Virus record (IMG/VR): IMGVR_UViG_3300023179_005186
Location: 62,001-126,000 of that record
Length of the DNA stretch: 64,000 bases
Direction: 5' to 3' (one strand)
Shown: one piece after another, positions 2,827-54,748 of the stretch
Position numbering within the stretch: the first letter of the stretch is position 1
Layout: every line of letters starts with the position of its first letter
Position numbers and translations under genes: made by a program
The notes under the pieces: generated by a model
What the model was told of the DNA's origin: nothing
The model's input: the letters and a program-made list of their open reading frames with translations, nothing else
Database searches by the model: none

Positions 2827-2878
2827 AAATAAAAAATTATATAAAAATTTTTCATTCTAATTAAATATTTTTGATTTT

Positions 2879-4111
2879 TTATGATAAATTAATCTTTAAA
2901 ATATCATCTTTATGATTAAAAAAAATTATTTTAAGCTCTTCTAAAATTTTATTTTTATTATCAATATTTTCTCTATCTTCTTCATCATATAATTTGTTTA
3001 AATATGAATTTGCATATTTAATCCATTTTTCTTTGTTTTTAAATTTAGAACTCGTTTTAATAAACTGAATAGTTTTTTCTATTTTATCTTTCTCAAATGG
3101 CTCAGTCAAAATACCCTGAACTTTTTCAAATATACCATTAATTTTATCATTTGTTTTTCCAACCATCCATTTTTTTCCATTAAAATATTTACATTTATTT
3201 CTTGACATATCTACTACACAAAAATTTTTATTTTCAGGTTTCGAATCATTTAAATATAAATGTTTTGTCATATTTGGAATTATATCTTTGCATTTTATCG
3301 TTGCTAAATAATTTAATATTATCTGAATATCTATTTTATCAAACTGTTCTGCTCCATGTGCTAAAATTATATTATTATTTGTTGTACTATTTAATGTATT
3401 ATGTTGTGTATTATTTATTGTTGTATGTTTTAATTTACCTAATTCATTTTTTAATTCAGCACAATTATTTTTTAACTCTTTACAATCATTCTTTAAATCA
3501 TTATTTAAATTTATTAATTGCTTATTTTGTTTATATAATGCTGTTAAAATTAATTTTGTTTGCTCATCTATTTCTATATCCTTTATTAATTCATTTAAAT
3601 ATGCATCATCTTCTTGATGTCTTGAAACTATATTCATTGACCTTGAACATTCTTTTATATCTGTACTTATTATTTTTTCAAATTCTTCTTTATCCTCCTC
3701 TTTTATATCATCTAATATTTTACAATATTTCGATTTATGACGTTTTAATGTATCTGATCTGGAAAATATTTGTAAACAAATATCACACTGATGTACTTTT
3801 TTTACTCTTGATGTTGATTTTCTAATAGGCTGCTCATGTGTGGAGCAGTGTGGAGGTTGTGCGGAGCTTGTGTGGAGCAGTGTGGAGCAGTGTGGAGGTT
3901 GTGCGGAGCTTGTGTGGAGCAGTGTGGAAGTTGTGTGGAGGTTGTGCGGAGCTTGTGTGGAGCAATATTGATCTGGATTTGAGCTGTCAGAATCAGGATT
4001 TACATTGACATTAATTGCTTTACATGAATACTTATTATTATTTATATGTCTTTTAAAATTATATAGTCTATTAAATCCTTTCCCACAATTTGGACATAAA
4101 TGATTTGACAT
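2879..4111 (-). CDS. Two-finger C2HC/C2H2-type zinc-finger protein with coiled coil and conserved NCLDV C-terminal domain (MIGE-like ORF)
   Basis: Fingers CPNC..FNRLYNFKRH..C (aa 6-30) and CDIC..FSRSDTLKRH..C (aa 109-130), a coiled coil, and C-terminal HGAEQFDKI...HLYLNDSKPENKNFCVVD...KYFNGKKW. The architecture resembles recalled MIGE ORFs of Imitervirales. Confidence 0.75.
   Translation of the reverse strand: MSNHLCPNCGKGFNRLYNFKRHINNNKYSCKAINVNVNPDSDSSNPDQYCSTQAPHNLHTTSTLLHTSSAQPPHCSTLLHTSSAQPPHCSTHEQPIRKSTSRVKKVHQCDICLQIFSRSDTLKRHKSKYCKILDDIKEEDKEEFEKIISTDIKECSRSMNIVSRHQEDDAYLNELIKDIEIDEQTKLILTALYKQNKQLINLNNDLKNDCKELKNNCAELKNELGKLKHTTINNTQHNTLNSTTNNNIILAHGAEQFDKIDIQIILNYLATIKCKDIIPNMTKHLYLNDSKPENKNFCVVDMSRNKCKYFNGKKWMVGKTNDKINGIFEKVQGILTEPFEKDKIEKTIQFIKTSSKFKNKEKWIKYANSYLNKLYDEEDRENIDNKNKILEELKIIFFNHKDDILKINLS
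3838..3963 (+). repeat. GC-rich 10/11-bp minisatellite (GTGTGGAGCA / GTGCGGAGCTT / GTGTGGAGGTT) inside the zinc-finger gene
   Basis: GGA(G) cores at 3842, 3852, 3863, 3874, 3884, 3894, 3905, 3916, 3926, 3937, 3948 and 3959. Confidence 0.97.
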
Positions 4112-4168
4112 AAAGTATTTATATATAATAATTATATTTAAATTTTAAATATATTTTATATCAAATCC

Positions 4169-4573
4169 ATTGCTCCAACTTGGAGCAATAGTAAAAAATT
4201 ATTTAATTGGTTCGCCGATATTTATTTTATACTTGTTTTTTCTTAGTTTATATTACAAAATGTCTAACACAACACAACTTGCTCCAATTTGGAGCAAATT
4301 ACTCAAACATACACATTGTTAACTATTATACTTTTTAAATGTTAATAATATTATTTTAAATTAAAAAAATATATATGTAACTAACTTGCTCCAAGTTGGA
4401 GCAAAACTCCACACTGCTCCAACTTGGAGCAGCATCCACACAGAGTTTGTGCGGAGGTTTGCTCCAAGTTGGAGCAAAACTAATTCGTTAGCTTATTAAC
4501 ATTTATTTTTATCATTTTTTGCGTTTTTTATCAAAAAATATATAAGTATACTACTTGCTCCAAGTTGGAGCAA
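4169..4573. repeat. Cluster of six 19-bp palindromes TGCTCCAA-N-TTGGAGCA
   Basis: Copies at 4169-4189, 4279-4297, 4386-4404, 4414-4432, 4458-4478 and 4555-4573. Confidence 0.97.
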
Positions 4574-4688
4574 ATTACACAACCATACACATAGCCAACC
4601 GATATACTTTTTATCAATCTTTGTTAGAATTTATGTATAACTGCAAACTAATTTACACAAATCTCCACACAAAATTTCTTAAAAATTT

Positions 4689-4799
4689 GTGTGTGTGTAG
4701 GAGGGGTAAAAAAAAATAAAATATATTTTTTTTATAAATTTTTTTTTTATTTTTAATTTTAAAATTTTTTTATTTTTTATACTTTTATTTTTAAAATTA
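4689..4799. other. (GT)5-AGGAGGGG motif followed by a 93-bp almost pure A/T tract
   Basis: 4707-4799 contains a single C (4782) and no G. Confidence 0.85.
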
Positions 4800-4895
4800 C
4801 GAGATGATAAAAACAAAATAAAAATAAAAAATATGGTCTGATTAAGATTGCATTAATATAAAAAAATAATATATTTACATCTGATAAAAAAATTC

Positions 4896-5126
4896 AAGAG
4901 CATAAATGGTCTTAAAGATAAATAAAATATAATTTTAATGATCTGTATCATCTAAAAACAAGATTATAAAGAGCATAAATGGTCTTAAAGATAAATAAAA
5001 TATAATTTTAATGATCTGTATCATCTAAAAACAAGATTATAAAGAGCATAAATGGTCTTAAAGATAAATAAAATATAATTTTAATGATCTGTATCATCTA
5101 AAAACAAGATTATAAAGAGCATAAAT
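4896..5126 (+). repeat. Three perfect 73-bp direct repeats plus a partial fourth (non-coding)
   Basis: GAGCATAAAT recurs at 4898, 4971, 5044 and 5117, and the intervening sequence is identical. Confidence 0.97.
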
Positions 5127-5197
5127 AGTTTTGAAAATATAAAAATATCAAGCTTATGATCTATAAAATAATTTATAGAGTATATAATTTAAAAATA

Positions 5198-5734
5198 TTA
5201 TAGTTCTTCTGATATTGATATAAATTTTGTTTGATTTTCAATATCAAAATACCATCCCCATAATTTATCATCAGTTATATAATTTTCAAAATCAGATGGT
5301 TCTTTCTTATAATAAAAGTTTGAAGATTTAACAAAATATCCAAAATTATTCCTTTTAATAATTAAATTTAATGATCTAAAACTTTTTATTGTATTAATTT
5401 TCAAGTTAGTATTATTACTTTCAGATGGTATATTTTTTATTAATTGATTAAGATTATTATTAGATTTGTTAAATTTAATTTTTGAGTTATTTTTTTTTTT
5501 ATAAAATATTGATTTAATCAAATTATTTAATTTTATCAAAATAATAAAACCAATAATACTAAACAAACACCAAAAATCTAAATTAATTAAATTTTTTTGG
5601 TTTTTGTATAAATATAAAATAATATATTTAATTAATTTAAATATTGTGAAAAAAAGTATAACTGTATAAAGTAAAATTTTTTTATTATTTAATATATAAT
5701 CTATTATGTTAATTAAAATAGTATTTTTATTCAT
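5198..5734 (-). CDS. Hypothetical membrane protein
   Basis: 178 aa ORF with two hydrophobic segments; no recognised family. Confidence 0.55.
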   Translation of the reverse strand: MNKNTILINIIDYILNNKKILLYTVILFFTIFKLIKYIILYLYKNQKNLINLDFWCLFSIIGFIILIKLNNLIKSIFYKKKNNSKIKFNKSNNNLNQLIKNIPSESNNTNLKINTIKSFRSLNLIIKRNNFGYFVKSSNFYYKKEPSDFENYITDDKLWGWYFDIENQTKFISISEEL

Positions 5735-18006: not shown

Positions 18007-18030
18007 TCATTATAAAAAAGTGATAAAATC

Positions 18031-18109
18031 ATATTACAACTAAAATTATATTACAACTAAAATTATATTACAACTAAAATTATATTACAACTAAAATTAT
18101 ATTACAACT
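18031..18109. repeat. 17-bp tandem repeat (4 full + 1 partial) duplicating the 3' end and stop of ORF 18097-19155
   Basis: ATATTACAACTAAAATT at 18031, 18048, 18065 and 18082, partial at 18099. Confidence 0.95.
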
Positions 18110-25696: not shown

Positions 25697-28558
25697 ATGG
25701 ATATAGCAATAGGAAGTGGTTTAGGTATATTCGGTAACTTAATAAATAATAATTCAAATTATAAAGAAAAAACTATTAATCCTCAATTTAATTATGAACA
25801 ATCTTATCCAATAAATTATTTAAATAATTATGAAAGTGATATTTGGAACACGAGAGATAAAATATTATATAATACAATAAGTGATTTATATAAAAAATCA
25901 GAAGATGATAGTAAAATAGTAAGTAATATTTGGAGAATACAGAATGATAGTATAAGTCAAATTAAAAATAAAGAAATTAATAATTTATTAAATAATGATA
26001 TAAATATGATAAAAAATATAGGAAGTAATAATATAGAAAGTATGAAAAATATAAATGATATTAATTCTGATTCAGATAGTATATTTTCAGATAATTTTTC
26101 TTTGCCAGAGTATATACCTGAAAATAAAAATTTAAGAAAAGTTAATATAAATGATAATATATCAGAATATTCTGATAGTGTAGATTCAAGACCAAATATT
26201 AATACAAGAGTTTTAAATACTCAAGATAAATTTTTAGAAGATATTGTCTCAAATTTATCAGGAAAATCAAATGGATTATCAGAATCAAAATCATATGCTT
26301 CAGATAATTGTACTACATTTGAAAATCAATTTAAACCATTAGAATTTAATCATAGCGGTATTCCGGGTACTTTACCGAGTACTAAACAAATATTAAATAT
26401 TTTTAATGATAAATTACGTTTTAATCCACAATCAAATTTTAATCCAGAATCAGATGGTAGATATGGAGTAACGTCTGATATGACTCATGATAACATGCAA
26501 CCATATTTTAAATCAAAAACTTATGGTTTTAATCCTGAATTTGATAAAGAACAAACAAATTATGCTGTTAGAAAAGTAGAATTATTTACAGGATCTGATC
26601 AAAACCCACAATTTAAACACAAAACAGATGTACCTTATTTATTTCCTCCAGAAATTGGTAAAATTGAATCTGTTACAGGAGTGCCTAATTTTTCTGATTT
26701 TTTTGAATCTAGAGTAATACCATCCGATAAAAGACAAGGAGAAAGACCATTTCAACCAGTTAGAGTAACACCAGGTTTAAATTTAGGTTATAATGAAATA
26801 GGTAATACTGGATATCAAGATTTATATAGAGCTTTACCAAAAAATGTAGATCAATTAAGAACAGTTGATAATCCAAAAGTTTCATATCAACCACCAGTAA
26901 TTGTAGGTCAAAAGGGTGATCGAAGAGGTGCAATTGGTAATTTTATTCAAAAGGGTCCAGATAGATTTTATGAACAATTACCAAATTCATTTATGCCACA
27001 AATAGGTGATTTTATAGCTCCTGCTATTTATGGTAAACATTTAAAAACAGTAACTAATCGAACATTAAATCCAGATAATCCTCATTTAAATCCAGTTAAA
27101 TCAGATGTTGATTTTGCAACACCAGAATATCTTTGGGGTCAATATAGAAAAACATTTAAAAAAACATTTGATTATGATGGTCCAAGAAACGTTCAAGAAA
27201 ATACTCGTGGTCAAATTATTAATCAAGAAACATACGTTCCAACAAGTACCCAAAGAGAATCTATGCCTGAATTAGATTTATCAAACATTAAAGGCAATTA
27301 TATTTCAGTACCATTAAATAACTATATGAATTTTGTTCCTGAAACAACTCTGCGTGAAATAATGTTAGAAGATAATGGACGAAAAAATTTAACAAACGTT
27401 TCAAATTCAATTAAAAGTTATTTATTTAATGCTGTAAATTCGGTTCCTGATGAAACTTTAAGATCAATTTTAACTGAAAAAATTATTTTAACAAATGTTA
27501 AAGAAAATTCTGAACGTGGATATTTATTTAATAATAATAATGCTATTCAAGATACAAATATGAGAAATTTATCAGAAGATAATTTAATTTTAGGTGTTTT
27601 ATCTAATAAAGAACAAGGATATTTATTTAATAATATAAATGCTATTCCTGATACTAATCTAAGAAATCTAGTAAATACTATGTATGAAAGAGGTGGTTTT
27701 GGATTTCAAGGTAATCACCAAGAACAATATATGTATAATTATAATAATGCAACTCCTCAAAGTAATTTAAGAAATTTCACTGAAGATCAACAAAATATTG
27801 TTGGAACAAAAGGTAATCATTTAGAAAATTATATATTTAACTATGCAAATGGTATAAGTGATGCAAATTTAAGAAATATAATTGAAGATCAAAAATATAT
27901 TATAGGTGCTAAGGGAAATCATCAAGAACAATATGCATTTAACTATGATAATGCAATTCCTAATACTAATTTAAAAGATTTAACTGCTGATCAAAAAAAT
28001 ATTATTGGATCTAAAGGTAACAGTATAAAGCAATATAATTTTAATTATGAAAATGGTACTCCAAATACAAGTTTAAGAGAATTAACTGCTGATCAAAAAA
28101 ATATTATAGGCACAATTGGAAATAAATTTGAACAATATAATTTTAACTATGATAATGCTACACCTGATGCAACAATGAGAGTTTTTTCAGGTCCACAAAA
28201 GAATCTAATAGGTTCTAAAGGTAACGGTACTGGCACAGTTAATTTTAATTATAAAAATGGTACTCCTGATGCAACAATGAGAGTATTTTCAGGTCCACAA
28301 AAGAATATTATAGGTACACAAGGTGATGGAACACAATCAAGATCAAGATTAGATGCAGATAATGCTTATTTAAATGTATCAAAAGAAATAGTTGCTGAAG
28401 GTAGAGATCCAGTTCCAGTAAAAGAAAATCGTGGTCCAACAACACAATTTACAGAATATGTTTTTTGTGATGATTCATATTATCCAAAACAAATTTTTAG
28501 TAGTGTAAGACCTTTATCAGCAGTACAAAATGAATTATATACTTTTTCTCAAGAATAA
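25697..28558 (+). CDS. Conserved NCLDV protein with C-terminal 34-aa repeats
   Basis: VELFTG, GERPFQPVRVTPGLNLGY and LPKNVDQLR..NPK core; about nine Y.FNY.N..P...LR....QK..IG.KGN repeats. Confidence 0.8.
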   Translation: MDIAIGSGLGIFGNLINNNSNYKEKTINPQFNYEQSYPINYLNNYESDIWNTRDKILYNTISDLYKKSEDDSKIVSNIWRIQNDSISQIKNKEINNLLNNDINMIKNIGSNNIESMKNINDINSDSDSIFSDNFSLPEYIPENKNLRKVNINDNISEYSDSVDSRPNINTRVLNTQDKFLEDIVSNLSGKSNGLSESKSYASDNCTTFENQFKPLEFNHSGIPGTLPSTKQILNIFNDKLRFNPQSNFNPESDGRYGVTSDMTHDNMQPYFKSKTYGFNPEFDKEQTNYAVRKVELFTGSDQNPQFKHKTDVPYLFPPEIGKIESVTGVPNFSDFFESRVIPSDKRQGERPFQPVRVTPGLNLGYNEIGNTGYQDLYRALPKNVDQLRTVDNPKVSYQPPVIVGQKGDRRGAIGNFIQKGPDRFYEQLPNSFMPQIGDFIAPAIYGKHLKTVTNRTLNPDNPHLNPVKSDVDFATPEYLWGQYRKTFKKTFDYDGPRNVQENTRGQIINQETYVPTSTQRESMPELDLSNIKGNYISVPLNNYMNFVPETTLREIMLEDNGRKNLTNVSNSIKSYLFNAVNSVPDETLRSILTEKIILTNVKENSERGYLFNNNNAIQDTNMRNLSEDNLILGVLSNKEQGYLFNNINAIPDTNLRNLVNTMYERGGFGFQGNHQEQYMYNYNNATPQSNLRNFTEDQQNIVGTKGNHLENYIFNYANGISDANLRNIIEDQKYIIGAKGNHQEQYAFNYDNAIPNTNLKDLTADQKNIIGSKGNSIKQYNFNYENGTPNTSLRELTADQKNIIGTIGNKFEQYNFNYDNATPDATMRVFSGPQKNLIGSKGNGTGTVNFNYKNGTPDATMRVFSGPQKNIIGTQGDGTQSRSRLDADNAYLNVSKEIVAEGRDPVPVKENRGPTTQFTEYVFCDDSYYPKQIFSSVRPLSAVQNELYTFSQE

Positions 28559-52664: not shown

Positions 52665-52780
52665 TAATATGTATAGGATAAGGCTCCAATTCCTAATATG
52701 TATAGGATAAGGCTCCAATTCCTAATATGTATAGGATAAGGCTCCAATTCCTAATATGTATAGGATAATGCTCCAATTCC
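52665..52780. repeat. 29-bp tandem repeat x4 duplicating the capsid gene 3' end
   Basis: TAATATGTATAGGATAAGGCTCCAATTCC at 52665, 52694 and 52723; the coding copy at 52752 differs by one base. Confidence 0.96.
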
Positions 52781-54748
52781 TCCAATTAATCTCAATACAT
52801 TAAAATTAGTAACCTGTACAACTAACTTATAATTAATATCATTATTATTAATTAACTTATTTTCCTGAAAATTATTAATTATACTATAATTAAATTTGTT
52901 TGTATTCGCTGTTTCACTTAAGAATATATCACTAACTTTAACTTTTAATATAAAACTAGGAATTCTACTTAAATTAATACTTCCTGAAGGTTGTGTTTCT
53001 GTTGGATTAAGTGCAAATGAATAACAATATAAACCTTTTTGTGGACTAGAATTATAACATTTAAATGGCATAAGATAATTAAAGAAATTTGAATTATCAC
53101 CAATTAATACTGTACTATTTAAATATAAATATGATTCTTCGATTATATTATAACTATCAATTAAATTTGTATATTTATTAAAAAGATTATCATTTATATA
53201 TGCATAATAATTTTTTGTAAGTAAATTTGTATTAATAAGTTCTTTTCCTATAATAAATTGTGTTGGATTAAAGTTTTTTTCATTATCAAATAATATTTTT
53301 AAATATTCAATAAAATAATTTTCTTCATTAGTTGTTGAATCAGTGTTATTTAATATAGAATATGTAAAACCTTGATTATTAGTAAATATATCACGAATAT
53401 TATTATTTTTAACAACAGACCAATACATATCTTTACAACAGTGAAAAAAATCAAGATCAAAAGAATTATTATATCTATTAAGATTATCAAATTCTATTTG
53501 TTGAACCTGAGTAATTAAATATTCATGACCTGATTGAGCAAATTTTTTCCTTTCAATACTATCTAAATAAATATATTCTGCCAGCATAGTAATCTCTAAT
53601 TTATTTTTCATTATTTCATTATTATTTTCAATTAAATAATTTAGAATATCATTTTCTACTTTCTCATTATTATAGTCTTTATCGATATTAATTTTAATAC
53701 ATTCATGAAATTTTTTTAAATTAATTTTTACTTGAATTGTATTAAATTGTAAAGCAATTAAAGGAAATGATAATCCATAATTTCCATTAAACCATAATGG
53801 TATGGGTAGATATAAATAATTATTATCCTTTGTTAAACTAAATAAATTAATTTCTTGATTTGCACCAATTAAATCATTATATAATTCAGGATTTTTATAA
53901 AAAAGATCTCCATAATTATTAATATAATAATCACTAAGAGAATTTATTTTATTACTACCTATATAAAAGTCAATTGAATTAAATAAATAGATCCCTATTT
54001 TATCAACCCAACTAAAATTTATTATATCATTAGTTACAATAATATCTTTTAATCTATTATACAAATCTTTATTTAGTTGTTCAATTATATCTAAATTTTT
54101 ATAAATAGCAAATTTAAATAATTCATAACTCATTTGTTCTTCAGTCCAATTCTCGTATATATAAACTAAAGTATTATTAATATCCTTAAATAATGAGGCA
54201 TTTGTAAACAAAGTTATATTTATATTACTTATATTAGTTAAAAGACCATTATTATAAAAATAATTAATTACTGTAAAGTATTGTTGATACTGATCCGAAT
54301 TAATATTACTTAAAATAAATAATGATAAATCATTGATATAAGTAAGACTTGTTATATTATCATATTTTTCAAAAAATAAGTTGATTACATTTAGTAAGTT
54401 ATTATAAAATTGTATAAAATAATCATAATATAAAATATATGTAAAATTATCTAATATATTTGGTAAAATATTTTTACTTATTATATCTTTATTTAAATTT
54501 GAAAAATCTATTTTAGGAAGCTTTATTCTTAATGTTAATCTTGATAATAAATCACCAGAATTTTTTGGTATTGTTAACACTGCTGTTTCTCCAAATTCTA
54601 CATTATTATCAAATGATAATTGATTTACTCTTTTACCAAAATTTGTATATCTTCTATATATTATATTAAAAAATGTTATTTCTGGGTTTGCAGTTAACAT
54701 TATATCTTGATTACCATATGAAATTACTTGAACCAGACCACCAGCCAT
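52751..54748 (-). CDS. Major capsid protein paralog (double jelly-roll)
   Basis: MAGGLVQVISYG..PEITFF..YRRYTNF, SGDLLSR, SFALNP..QPSGSINLSRI and NFNVLRLIGGIG. Confidence 0.93.
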   Translation of the reverse strand: MAGGLVQVISYGNQDIMLTANPEITFFNIIYRRYTNFGKRVNQLSFDNNVEFGETAVLTIPKNSGDLLSRLTLRIKLPKIDFSNLNKDIISKNILPNILDNFTYILYYDYFIQFYNNLLNVINLFFEKYDNITSLTYINDLSLFILSNINSDQYQQYFTVINYFYNNGLLTNISNINITLFTNASLFKDINNTLVYIYENWTEEQMSYELFKFAIYKNLDIIEQLNKDLYNRLKDIIVTNDIINFSWVDKIGIYLFNSIDFYIGSNKINSLSDYYINNYGDLFYKNPELYNDLIGANQEINLFSLTKDNNYLYLPIPLWFNGNYGLSFPLIALQFNTIQVKINLKKFHECIKINIDKDYNNEKVENDILNYLIENNNEIMKNKLEITMLAEYIYLDSIERKKFAQSGHEYLITQVQQIEFDNLNRYNNSFDLDFFHCCKDMYWSVVKNNNIRDIFTNNQGFTYSILNNTDSTTNEENYFIEYLKILFDNEKNFNPTQFIIGKELINTNLLTKNYYAYINDNLFNKYTNLIDSYNIIEESYLYLNSTVLIGDNSNFFNYLMPFKCYNSSPQKGLYCYSFALNPTETQPSGSINLSRIPSFILKVKVSDIFLSETANTNKFNYSIINNFQENKLINNNDINYKLVVQVTNFNVLRLIGGIGALSYTY

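What the first reader, a model, noticed from the sequence alone, without database searches (positions are those of the whole stretch)
2879..5126. The whole island looks like a self-contained mobile or origin-like module (MIGE-like) inserted among core genes
The order is ZnF ORF, phased array, palindromes, (GT)5-AGGAGGGG, A/T tract, then 73-bp repeats. It is the only kilobase-scale non-coding stretch in an otherwise tightly packed window. It parallels iteron replicons (initiator, iterons, DNA-unwinding element) and MIGEs of Imitervirales (non-coding leader plus ZnF ORF, mobility mechanism unresolved as far as I recall). No transposase, TIR or TSD could be identified, so mobility is inference.
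Basis: inference. Interest (0 to 1): 0.7.

Follow-up and report, generated by a model that had tools for sequence, protein, structure and literature searches.

The report
Giant-virus zinc-finger element binding itself
This 2.4-kb stretch is one copy of a gene-plus-leader module found in many copies across giant viruses, present or absent between relatives, and its repeats look like docking sites for the zinc-finger protein it encodes, which gives a testable lead on how these poorly understood elements work.

Summary

**What the segment is.** Window 2827-5197 lies between the convergent asnB gene and a small ORF.
- Two syntenic relatives have an empty site there (33 nt and 1 nt).
- A closer relative carries the orthologous element at the same place.
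- A diverged paralogous module with the same layout lies 180 kb away on the same contig.
- At least 48 non-redundant relatives occur in giant-virus metagenome contigs.
- This fits the published definition of MIGE: a zinc-finger ORF preceded by non-coding DNA.

The "phased array" is coding. It is the linker between the two C2H2 fingers.

**Main results.**
- 46 of 48 elements share a strand-fixed hallmark upstream of the ATG: a T-run followed by CTA(CA)5A.
- The repeats in each leader and each coding linker are specific to that element.
- The repeats change with the finger's recognition residues as the C2H2 code predicts: N gives GAGG, H gives GGGG, A or T gives GTGG.
- They are spaced 10-11 nt apart and are read in several reading frames.
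- Between orthologues the palindromes are 89% identical, against 55-62% for the spacers.

The protein therefore most likely binds its own locus. Mobility is still inferred: no transposase, TIR or TSD was found, although relatives carry fused GIY-YIG, T5orf172 or HNH nucleases. GC skew does not support an origin.

The parts
2827..2878 (.). Left junction: spacer between the asnB stop (2826) and the stop of the zinc-finger ORF. The left boundary of the inserted unit lies in here.
   Evidence: In L220 and L020 the asnB stop is 33 nt and 1 nt from the stop of the small convergent ORF.
2879..4111 (-). Gene for a 410-aa protein: C2H2 finger 1, repetitive linker, C2H2 finger 2, coiled-coil-like segment, Asn-rich stretch, conserved C-terminal domain.
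   Evidence: At least 55 full-length homologues (E 1e-84 to 1e-42).
4022..4096 (-). Finger 1 (residues 6-30). Recognition residues at -1, 2, 3, 6 are R, Y, N, R, for which the standard code predicts GAG.
   Evidence: GAG lies in the palindrome half-site TTGGAGCAA.
3788..4021 (-). Coding linker between the fingers. It holds the phased array at 3838-3964: twelve G[T/C]GG sites on the + strand (antisense to the gene), 10-11 nt apart.
   Evidence: Only 31% amino-acid identity to the orthologue in L219, while the DNA word TGCTCCACAC is kept.
3722..3787 (-). Finger 2 (residues 109-130). Recognition residues R, D, T, R, for which the code predicts G(T/C)G(G/T).
3425..3565 (-). Heptad-rich, probably coiled-coil segment (residues 183-229). 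A likely dimerisation region.
   Evidence: Heptad count and weak coiled-coil Pfam hits. This is inference.
2882..3370 (-). Conserved C-terminal domain (residues 248-410). No Pfam family. The fold is specific to Nucleocytoviricota.
   Evidence: AF2 model with pLDDT 94.6; fold searches; 331 representatives at E<=1e-3.
4112..4127 (-). TATATATAAATACTTT box directly before the ATG. Probably the gene's own promoter, of the TATATA class common in this genome.
   Evidence: 35 of the last 40 nt before the ATG (88%) are identical to L219.
4170..4573 (.). Six 19-nt palindromes TTGCTCCAAnTTGGAGCAA at 4170-4188, 4279-4297, 4386-4404, 4414-4432, 4459-4477 and 4555-4573, with CTCCACAC / GTGCGGAGG words between them.
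   Evidence: 89% identical to L219, against 55-62% for the spacers.
4686..4707 (-). Family hallmark. On the gene strand it reads ACCCCTCCTA(CA)5AA, preceded by a T-run.
   Evidence: Present in 46 of 48 non-redundant elements, always on the gene strand, usually 175-325 nt before the ATG (587 nt here).
4708..4800 (.). A/T tract next to the hallmark (AAAAA/TTTTT blocks).
   Evidence: Moderately conserved in register across the family and alignable with L219.
4801..5148 (.). Distal leader. It holds four AGACCAT motifs on the gene strand (4833, 4906, 4979, 5052) and short ATGAT..ATCAT hairpins. Positions 4896-5148 are a 73-nt unit x3.5.
   Evidence: AGACCAT occurs in 20 of 46 distal leaders against 1.3 expected. 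L219 has a single copy of the unit.
5149..5197 (.). Right junction: spacer before the stop of ORF 5198-5734(-), with a short hairpin. The right boundary of the inserted unit lies in here.
   Evidence: (D15).

Best explanation
Window 2827-5197 is one copy of a compact gene-plus-leader element of giant viruses of the Mimivirus group. It fits the MIGE type.

**Anatomy.** The element sits between two convergent conserved genes and is present in some relatives and absent in others. It encodes a two-finger C2H2 protein with a probable dimerising coiled coil and a conserved C-terminal domain of unknown activity.

**What the repeats are.** The repeats are arrays of the protein's own binding sites, not spacer or junk.
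- Sites of the finger-2 type (here G[T/C]GG) form a helically phased array on the antisense strand inside the gene's own inter-finger linker. They recur in sense orientation just after a family-wide hallmark, a T-run followed by CTA(CA)5A.
- Sites of the finger-1 type (here the GAG-containing palindromes) fill the leader between the hallmark and a TATATA-type promoter.

**Proposed action.** The protein, as a dimer or higher oligomer, most likely coats or loops the 5' part of its own locus. The sites occur almost nowhere else in the 316-kb contig, so this would be self-directed control, such as autorepression or marking of the element.

**Spread.** Spread is inferred to be of the homing or recombination type. 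It would use a nuclease supplied in trans or lost from this copy, because relatives of the same architecture carry fused GIY-YIG, T5orf172 or HNH nuclease domains.

**Shown versus inferred.** Shown here: the anatomy, the family, the empty and occupied sites, the covariation of fingers and sites, and the DNA-level conservation. Inferred: actual binding, looping or autorepression, and the mode of spread.
For: **Insertion**
- L220 (neighbour protein 78% identical) has 33 nt between the asnB stop and the stop of the small ORF with the [WY]GW[FY]FDIE motif. L020 (55% identical) has 1 nt.
- L219 (84% identical) has the orthologous element at the same place.

**Family**
- A paralogue with the same layout but different repeats lies at G000:244588-246420.
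- There are at least 55 full-length homologues and 331 HMM representatives.
- 48 non-redundant loci were analysed; 46 carry the hallmark on the gene strand.

**Self-sites**
- Linker words recur in the element's own leader: mean 8.3 shared 8-mers, against 1.4 in other leaders and 0.7 for a control piece of coding sequence. No permutation out of 10,000 reached the observed value.
- Finger-2 classes match the recognition code on the antisense strand of their own linker: RDNR gives GAGG at 4.69 per 100 nt, RDHR gives GGGG at 4.69, RDAR gives GTGG at 2.73, and the window's RDTR gives GTGG at 3.85 plus GCGG at 1.28. The non-cognate classes score 0-0.55, and the sense strand scores at most 0.54, mostly zero.
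- The site type switches together with the +3 residue between well-supported sister elements.
- Finger-1 classes share leader arrays (RSSD with TGCAGAA, KYNM with TGCCAAA, RKDY with TGGAGAAA, KSHD with GACCGAAA).

**DNA-level selection**
- 20 of 24 linkers read their top repeat in 2-3 reading frames, with spacing of 10-11 nt.
- The window's linker is 31% identical in protein to L219, against 94% for the C-terminal domain, yet the DNA word is kept.
- The palindromes are 89% identical to L219, against 55-62% for the spacers.

**Private sites**
- All 10 copies of GTGTGGAG and 18 of 37 copies of TGGAGCA in the contig lie in this element. 9 of 12 copies of GCAGAATTT lie in the paralogue. Neither motif occurs in the other element.

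**Nuclease-fused relatives:**

**Definition of MIGE:**
Against: - No binding experiment exists. The recognition code is a rule of thumb, and there are exceptions (L164, L189, and several finger-1 classes such as KSND, KYNM and RKDY).
- About a quarter of the elements show little sharing between linker and leader.
- No transposase, TIR or TSD was found, and no near-identical second copy. The two copies on the contig are only about 25-32% identical over the stretches that align. The element is vertically conserved in L219. Duplication and loss of an ordinary gene family could therefore give the same presence/absence pattern.
- Homology to the PgV/CeV MIGE ORFs was not testable here.
- The window's copy is atypical for the family: its sites are palindromic and dispersed, and the hallmark lies 587 nt from the ATG.
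- Transcription of the leader could not be assessed.
Confidence: 0.68

Rival explanations
1. It is an ordinary viral gene family of autoregulated zinc-finger transcription factors. The family grows by duplication and shrinks by loss. It is not mobile, and the upstream repeats are just autoregulatory operators.
For: - Paralogues are highly diverged (about 25-32% identity over the stretches that align).
- Tandem clusters occur (L151, L151b, L200; L018).
- The element is vertically conserved at the same site in L219.
- No TIR, TSD or transposase was found.
- The proximal promoter is of the TATATA class common in this genome.
Against: - Two syntenic relatives have empty sites with 1-33 nt between the flanking stop codons, and one of them is fairly close (78% identity in the neighbour protein).
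- Family members sit in unrelated gene neighbourhoods.
- The predicted sites are confined to the element itself, so there are no evident target genes in 316 kb.
- Relatives carry fused homing-type nucleases.
- The long conserved leader (hallmark, A/T tract, distal AGACCAT) exceeds what an operator would need.
Confidence: 0.22
2. It is a replication origin module. The iterons and an A/T-rich unwinding tract are bound by the adjacent initiator-like protein, which recruits the viral D5 primase-helicase.
For: - The layout of iterons plus an A/T tract plus an alternating purine-pyrimidine hallmark resembles origins.
- The C-terminal domain shows weak, sub-threshold but recurrent structural resemblance to the region before the helicase domain in D5, AsfvPrimPol and other SF3 helicases. 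Values: Foldseek E 0.02-0.15 in BFVD, 0.26-0.59 in AFDB and 1.6-3.1 in PDB; VIA Z 4.7 over 133 residues.
Against: - Cumulative GC or AT skew shows no inflection at either element.
- The module is absent from syntenic relatives.
- It is multi-copy, and each copy has a different specificity.
- There is no Rep, helicase or primase domain.
- A profile comparison with the contig's own D5_N domain was negative.
- All structural Z-scores are within the tool's stated noise range, and BEN domains score equally (Z 5.2).
Confidence: 0.07
3. The repeats are neutral slippage products (microsatellite-like) in a low-complexity, AT-rich genome and have no function. The leader-linker similarity comes from local duplication.
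For: Close variants differ by whole repeat units. The 73-nt array is specific to this lineage.
Against: - Site type covaries with finger residues across independent sister pairs.
- Site orientation is exclusive to one strand.
- Spacing is 10-11 nt rather than multiples of 3 inside a coding region.
- Palindromes are more conserved than spacers.
- The hallmark is conserved in 46 of 48 elements.
Confidence: 0.03

Closest known systems
[quoted passage not shown]
   Same: [quoted passage not shown]
- Several copies per genome.
- Found in Mimiviridae-type viruses.
- No recognisable transposase, and the mode of spread is unknown.
   Different: - Sequence homology to the PgV/CeV copies could not be tested here.
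- Only 2 copies were seen in the 316-kb contig, which CheckV estimates at 28% complete.
- No bacterial relatives were found by the pattern-limited scan of prokaryote genomes, whereas the review mentions some.
- The two held texts that mention MIGE do not mention the hallmark, the self-site arrays or the finger-site covariation.
Free-standing homing endonuclease genes of phages (for example the I-TevI/Seg/Mob type). From my own knowledge, I-TevI also acts as autorepressor of its own promoter.
   Same: - Insertion between conserved genes, with empty sites in relatives.
- Modular sequence-specific DNA binding that includes a zinc finger.
- Self-binding near the gene's own promoter.
- Family members here with GIY-YIG, T5orf172 or HNH domains fused to the same finger and C-terminal-domain architecture.
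   Different: - The window protein has no nuclease domain.
- Homing endonuclease genes do not carry long structured leaders or arrays of their own sites inside their coding sequence.
Iteron and initiator systems and viral maintenance elements (plasmid Rep with iterons; EBNA1 with the oriP family of repeats and dyad symmetry). This comparison is from my own knowledge.
   Same: Arrays of direct or palindromic sites for a dimeric protein encoded next to them, beside an A/T-rich tract. Each copy has a private specificity.
   Different: No Rep or origin-binding fold was recognised, there is no skew signal, the module is dispensable in relatives, and the arrays extend into the protein's own ORF.
hAT and P-type transposons, whose BED or THAP zinc fingers bind subterminal repeat arrays (from my own knowledge)
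   Same: An element-encoded zinc-finger domain recognises short motifs repeated many times within the element itself.
   Different: There is no DDE/RNase-H catalytic domain, no TIRs, and no TSD. The C-terminal domain is a small, mainly helical domain with a three-stranded sheet.

Membership tests
MIGE (Major Interspersed Genomic Element) | [quoted passage not shown] | tested here: met
   Two C2H2 fingers, Pfam PF00096 at E 2.9e-8.
MIGE (Major Interspersed Genomic Element) | ORF preceded by a stretch of non-coding DNA that belongs to the repeated unit | tested here: met
   The leader layout (distal motifs, A/T tract, hallmark, site arrays, TATATA box) is shared by the paralogue and by 46 of 48 relatives.
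MIGE (Major Interspersed Genomic Element) | Multiple interspersed copies per genome (6-20 reported) | tested here: inconclusive
   Two copies 180 kb apart in a 316-kb contig estimated at 28% complete. Related contigs carry 2-3 copies.
MIGE (Major Interspersed Genomic Element) | Resides in Mimiviridae-type giant viruses | tested here: met
   AAAAATTGA sits at -40 to -63 before 40 of 238 genes (that this is the Mimiviridae early promoter is my own knowledge). AsnB, RFC and D5 genes are present. Structural relatives all come from Nucleocytoviricota.
MIGE (Major Interspersed Genomic Element) | Sequence homology to the PgV-16T or CeV-01B MIGE ORF | not testable with these tools
There was only a weak BFVD hit to one CeV protein (E 0.14).
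Free-standing homing endonuclease gene | Encodes a GIY-YIG, HNH, LAGLIDADG or similar nuclease | tested here: not met
   No nuclease domain was found in the window protein. Only relatives have one.
Free-standing homing endonuclease gene | Inserted between conserved genes, with empty sites in related genomes | tested here: met
   L220 and L020 are empty and L219 is occupied.
Iteron-type replication origin with adjacent initiator | Repeated initiator-binding sites beside an A/T-rich tract | tested here: met
Iteron-type replication origin with adjacent initiator | Initiator of a known Rep, helicase or primase family | tested here: not met
   No such domain was found. The D5_N profile comparison was negative. 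Only sub-threshold fold resemblance was seen.
Iteron-type replication origin with adjacent initiator | Strand-composition switch at the site | tested here: not met
   Cumulative GC or AT skew shows no inflection at 65-67 kb or 245 kb. In giant viruses skew mostly follows the coding strand, so this is a weak test.
Class II DNA transposon | Transposase gene, terminal inverted repeats, target-site duplication | tested here: not met
   No transposase domain. No terminal inverted repeat among the 134 inverted pairs. The junctions are A/T-rich and show no clear duplication.

The most novel reading that the evidence does not exclude
These elements form a natural library of matched pairs: a two-finger protein and a private array of its own sites. 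The pairs co-evolve, with residue +3 and the middle base of the site switching together. The 5' module (leader array plus finger 1) appears to be exchanged between elements. Part of the site array is embedded, helically phased, inside the protein's own coding sequence. Under this reading, self-recognition is the core of how the element is copied or kept: it marks the element for homing, recombination or replication by viral enzymes. That would be a mode of selfish-element propagation not described for any virus.
Probability: 0.3. Interest if true: 0.85.

Novelty: new member of a known kind. Interest (0 to 1): 0.62.

Why it matters
MIGEs were named in 2013, and the 2018 review that I could read still calls their mode of spread unknown. 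This locus and its 48 relatives turn a vague description ("zinc-finger ORF plus non-coding leader") into a defined layout and a concrete hypothesis.

- **Layout:** a universal hallmark, two classes of site arrays, and fixed orientations and spacings.
- **Hypothesis:** the protein binds its own leader and its own coding linker, with a specificity that can be read from the finger residues.
- **Testability:** gel shifts and single-residue swaps would test this directly.
- **Coding oddity:** the locus is an unusually clear case of a protein-coding segment shaped by selection on DNA. Its repeats have a 10-11-nt period and are read in all three frames.
- **Annotation:** these "intergenic repeats" and "low-complexity linkers" are functional parts of one unit.

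Tried and rejected
- **Protein-pattern scans of viral contigs** with the full-length and C-terminal-domain alignments. The patterns were low-complexity, and only two weak loci came back.
- **Exact scan of viral contigs for the hallmark CTACACACACACAA**. It returned 117 unrelated loci, none with the C-terminal domain. A dead end.
- **Read laying.** The second laid only assembler contigs. The element lies next to asnB in three other samples. One RNA run holds only 3695-4086. Nothing could be concluded about transcription of the leader or about empty alleles.
- **GC and AT skew**: no origin-like inflection.
- **Family libraries.** Pfam on the C-terminal domain of 71 members, NCBIfam, PADLOC and PDB sequences gave no family. 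PHROGs gave only weak matches (best E 2.6e-4), none to the C-terminal domain.
- **Fold searches**. Only sub-threshold matches appeared, to the AsfvPrimPol/D5 region before the helicase and to BEN domains. I do not assign the fold.
- **hhalign** of the C-terminal-domain profile against the contig's own D5_N region: negative.
- **Rfam**: only sub-threshold miRNA-precursor hits caused by the palindromes. No tRNA was found.
- **Prokaryote genome scan**: no relatives.
- **Primary MIGE papers**: not held.
- **Complex prediction** was not used, because the tool is offered only for windows of bacteria, archaea or their viruses, and this is a virus of eukaryotes.
- **First structure model** from 19 close sequences was poor (pLDDT 57). 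It was replaced by the model from 71 sequences.
- **Transposon reading:** considered and rejected (no TIR, TSD or transposase).
- **Hairpin-rule terminators** as an explanation for the six palindromes: rejected. They are identical copies lying upstream of the gene, and they are conserved as sites.
Full report
**1. Setting**

The window is bases 62001-126000 of a 315,722-bp virus contig from a lake metagenome. The contig is 20% GC and 90% coding, with a median ORF-free gap of 70 nt. Three lines of evidence mark it as a giant virus of the Mimivirus group:
- The octamer AAAAATTGA lies 40-63 nt before 40 of 238 genes. That this is the Mimiviridae early promoter is my own knowledge.
- It carries RFC, asparagine synthetase and a D5-type primase-helicase.
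- All structural relatives of the protein in question come from Nucleocytoviricota.

**2. The observation**

- ORF 2879-4111(-) has two C2H2 fingers.
- The phased array lies at 3838-3964.
- Six copies of TGCTCCAANTTGGAGCA lie at 4170-4573. None is expected by chance, and there are none elsewhere on the contig.
- (GT)5-AGGAGGGG lies at 4686-4707, followed by an A/T tract and a 73-nt x3.5 tandem repeat at 4896-5148.
- The 1086-nt gap is the only ORF-free stretch of 1 kb or more in the window.

One correction matters. The phased array is coding. It is the linker between finger 1 (4022-4096) and finger 2 (3722-3787).

**3. A repeated unit, present or absent at this site**

A second module lies 180 kb away (G000:244588-246420, locus L006).
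- Its protein has the same order of parts but matches the window protein only weakly: 32% identity over the C-terminal part in the genome search (E 4e-9) and 25% over the N-terminal part by BLASTP.
- Its leader has the same layout with different words: AATTCTGCA repeats that also occur in its own coding linker, then (GA)5-GTTTGAGGGA, an A/T tract, and tandem repeats of about 65 nt.

Orthologues of the neighbouring 432-aa protein gave a graded series of relatives:

| Relative | Identity of neighbour protein | State of the asnB / small-ORF junction |
|---|---|---|
| L219 | 84% | Orthologous element present, next to asnB |
| L220 | 78% | Empty; the two stop codons are 33 nt apart |
| L221 | 73% | A different 252-aa ORF follows the small ORF; asnB is not seen on the contig |
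| L020 | 55% | Empty; the two stop codons are 1 nt apart |

The small ORF is recognised by its [WY]GW[FY]FDIE motif. The unit 2827-5197, gene plus the whole leader, is therefore the difference between occupied and empty sites. A loss in L220 cannot be excluded.

**4. The family**

The protein has at least 55 full-length homologues at E 1e-84 to 1e-42, often two per contig. A profile of the C-terminal domain finds 331 cluster representatives. Distant members keep the same order: finger 1, repetitive linker, finger 2, coiled coil, Asn-rich stretch, C-terminal domain.

From one metagenome scan and several look-ups I assembled 48 non-redundant elements with at least 450 nt of upstream DNA.
- In 46 of them a T-run followed by (Y)CTA(CA)5A lies on the gene strand, never on the other strand. 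It usually lies 175-325 nt before the ATG; in the window it is 587 nt.
- Upstream of it are an A/T tract conserved in register and, further out, AGACCAT motifs (20 of 46 leaders against 1.3 expected).
- Downstream come a GC-containing word at +13 to +30, AAAGTA-type boxes, a compact array of 4-10 repeats spaced 9-12 nt, and a TATATA-type box just before the ATG.

The window's copy is an expanded variant. Its sites are palindromic and dispersed (28-109 nt apart), and its distal unit is triplicated. The orthologue L219 has a single copy of that unit.

**5. What the repeats are**

Four independent lines say they are the protein's own binding sites.

(a) *They are specific to each locus.* GC-containing 8-mers of a linker recur in the element's own leader on average 8.3 times. 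The figure is 1.4 for other leaders and 0.7 for an equal-length piece of coding sequence after finger 2. None of 10,000 permutations reached the observed sum.

(b) *They covary with the recognition residues.* Elements were grouped by finger-2 residues at -1, 2, 3 and 6. The table gives predicted sites per 100 nt on the antisense strand of the element's own linker.

| Finger-2 residues | Site | Density per 100 nt |
|---|---|---|
| RDNR | GAGG | 4.69 |
| RDHR | GGGG | 4.69 |
| RDAR | GTGG | 2.73 |
| RDTR (window) | GTGG + GCGG | 3.85 + 1.28 |

- Non-cognate classes score 0-0.55, and the sense strand scores at most 0.54, mostly zero.
- That Asn reads A, His reads G, Ala or Thr reads T, Arg at -1 and 6 reads G, and Asp2 adds a 3' G/T is the canonical C2H2 code, which I take from my own knowledge.
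- On a tree of the post-finger part of the protein, the site type changes together with residue +3 between well-supported sisters: L176 against L163/L166, L168 against L158/L152, and L172 against L190. Shared descent does not explain the pattern. L164 and L189 are exceptions.
- Finger-1 classes likewise share leader arrays across otherwise distant elements: RSSD with TGCAGAA (including the window contig's own paralogue and L147), KYNM with TGCCAAA, RKDY with TGGAGAAA, KSHD with GACCGAAA.
- The window's finger 1 (R, Y, N, R, predicting GAG) fits the half-site TTGGAGCAA.

(c) *Selection acts on DNA, not on peptide.* In 20 of 24 linkers the commonest repeated 6-mer is read in two or three reading frames. 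The spacing peaks at 10-11 nt, one turn of the helix, not at multiples of three. Between the window and L219, identity by region is as follows:

| Region | Amino-acid identity |
|---|---|
| Finger 1 | 87% |
| Linker | 31% (43 gap columns) |
| Finger 2 | 86% |
| Middle / coiled coil | 78% |
| C-terminal domain | 94% |

Both linkers nevertheless keep the DNA word TGCTCCACAC.

(d) *The sites are conserved.* The six palindromes are collinear and 89% identical between the two orthologous leaders. The DNA between them is 55-62% identical.

The sites are also private. All 10 copies of GTGTGGAG and 18 of 37 copies of TGGAGCA on the contig lie in this 2.3-kb element. Nine of 12 copies of GCAGAATTT lie in the paralogue. 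Neither motif occurs in the other element.

The orientation is fixed. Finger-2-type sites are sense-oriented just after the hallmark and antisense in the linker (sense:antisense in leaders: KYNR 23:0, KFNR 9:0, RDNR 19:3; in linkers: 0:38, 0:29, 4:126). They therefore bracket the finger-1 array, the promoter and the start of the gene.

**6. The C-terminal domain**

- With 71 diverse sequences AlphaFold2 gives a confident model (pLDDT 94.6, pTM 0.90): two helices, a three-stranded sheet, then a helical bundle.
- The model matches the C-terminal parts of C2H2 proteins from many giant viruses.
- In ESM-Atlas clusters the domain is combined with zf-C2H2 alone, with T5orf172/MUG113 plus zf-C2H2, or with GIY-YIG plus zf-C2H2. 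One cluster has an N-terminal HNH fusion.
- Matches to solved structures are all sub-threshold. They fall on the segment before the helicase domain in AsfvPrimPol and D5, and on BEN domains. A profile comparison with the contig's own D5_N region was negative.
- I treat the domain as a non-catalytic binding or oligomerisation module of unknown partner. The near-invariant residues (G, E, N, P, N, G, W, N) do not look like a nuclease active site.

**7. How it most likely works**

*Shown:* a gene-plus-leader unit that is present or absent at a fixed junction; a family-wide cis layout; and arrays whose sequence tracks the fingers.

*Inferred:*
- The protein binds these arrays, probably paired through the heptad-rich segment.
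- Because sites lie on both sides of its promoter and start codon, binding would coat or loop the 5' end of its own locus. The simplest consequence is autorepression, or marking of the element.
- Spread between genomes would be by recombination of the homing type, using a nuclease that this copy lacks but relatives carry.

The last step is the weakest. No TIR, TSD or transposase was found. No near-identical second copy exists. The element is inherited vertically between the window and L219. Duplication and loss of an autoregulated gene family is therefore a serious rival, which I put at about 0.2.

The origin-like reading gets no support from skew and fits poorly with dispensability and with private specificities. 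I put it at about 0.07.

**8. Comparison with what is known**

The unit meets the two structural criteria given for MIGE: a zinc-finger ORF, preceded by non-coding DNA that belongs to the repeat. It also lies in the right kind of virus. Copy number is only partly met (2 copies in 28% of a genome).

I file it as a new member of a known kind. It works most like a nuclease-less free-standing homing-endonuclease gene with self-binding. It has formal parallels to iteron/initiator pairs and to transposons whose zinc-finger domains bind subterminal repeats. It fails the defining tests for each of those families.

**9. Limits**

- Nothing here is experimental.
- The recognition code is approximate, and about a quarter of the elements show little linker-leader sharing.
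- Read-level data could not be used.

Noticed in passing
G000:C1:138645-139786 (same contig, outside the window): A 1.1-kb ORF-free stretch with GC 0.33, against 0.20 for the genome. It holds a short RNA-polymerase-subunit-like coding fragment and looks like one or more self-splicing introns inside a polymerase gene.
   Followed up: no
G000:C1:149720-150937 (outside the window): A 1.2-kb gap holding three tandem GC-rich units of about 46 nt (..gcaagcgagtaa[a/g]gttgcagacaaa..) and an inverted partial copy.
   Followed up: no
G000:C1:173871-174774 and 279175-279944 (outside the window): The same hairpin-like word (cacccatttacaaaaaaatgggacag) occurs in two distant ORF-free gaps. It is a small dispersed repeat.
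   Followed up: no
window 52665-52781; 18024-18109; 27708-28324: Other tandem repeats in the window: a 29-nt unit x4 (98% matches), a 17-nt unit x5.1 (98%), and 102-nt repeats with 71-87% matches that appear to be coding.
   Followed up: no
L018:1246-3581: In one related contig the element is preceded by a DDE_3 (IS630-like) transposase gene and by a second zinc-finger gene of 373 aa. This looks like a local cluster of mobile genes.
   Followed up: no
P0171 (and P0208, P0209): A cluster of family members carries an HNH endonuclease domain fused N-terminally to the two-finger and C-terminal-domain architecture. BFVD and ESM-Atlas also show GIY-YIG and T5orf172 fusions.
   Followed up: partly
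P0005/P0200, P0003/P0198, P0119/P0210, P0171/P0208/P0209: Variants more than 90% identical differ by whole repeat units in the linker, the Asn-rich stretch or the coiled coil. Copy number changes quickly.
   Followed up: yes
L160 vs L217, L141, L159 (tree): Elements with nearly identical C-terminal domains carry different finger-1 residues and leader arrays, while distant elements share them. The 5' module (leader array plus finger 1) seems to be exchanged between elements by recombination.
   Followed up: partly
L219:8904-10406: The closest relative carrying the element has an extra 500-aa PhoD-like gene between the leader and the small ORF. L221 has a different 252-aa ORF after the small ORF. 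This junction is a hotspot of gene-content change.
   Followed up: partly
window 3695-4086: One metatranscriptome run (X19) holds contigs, 95-99% identical, that cover only the 5' half of the zinc-finger ORF and none of the leader. This hints that the gene is expressed in a related strain, but the data are contigs only.
   Followed up: partly
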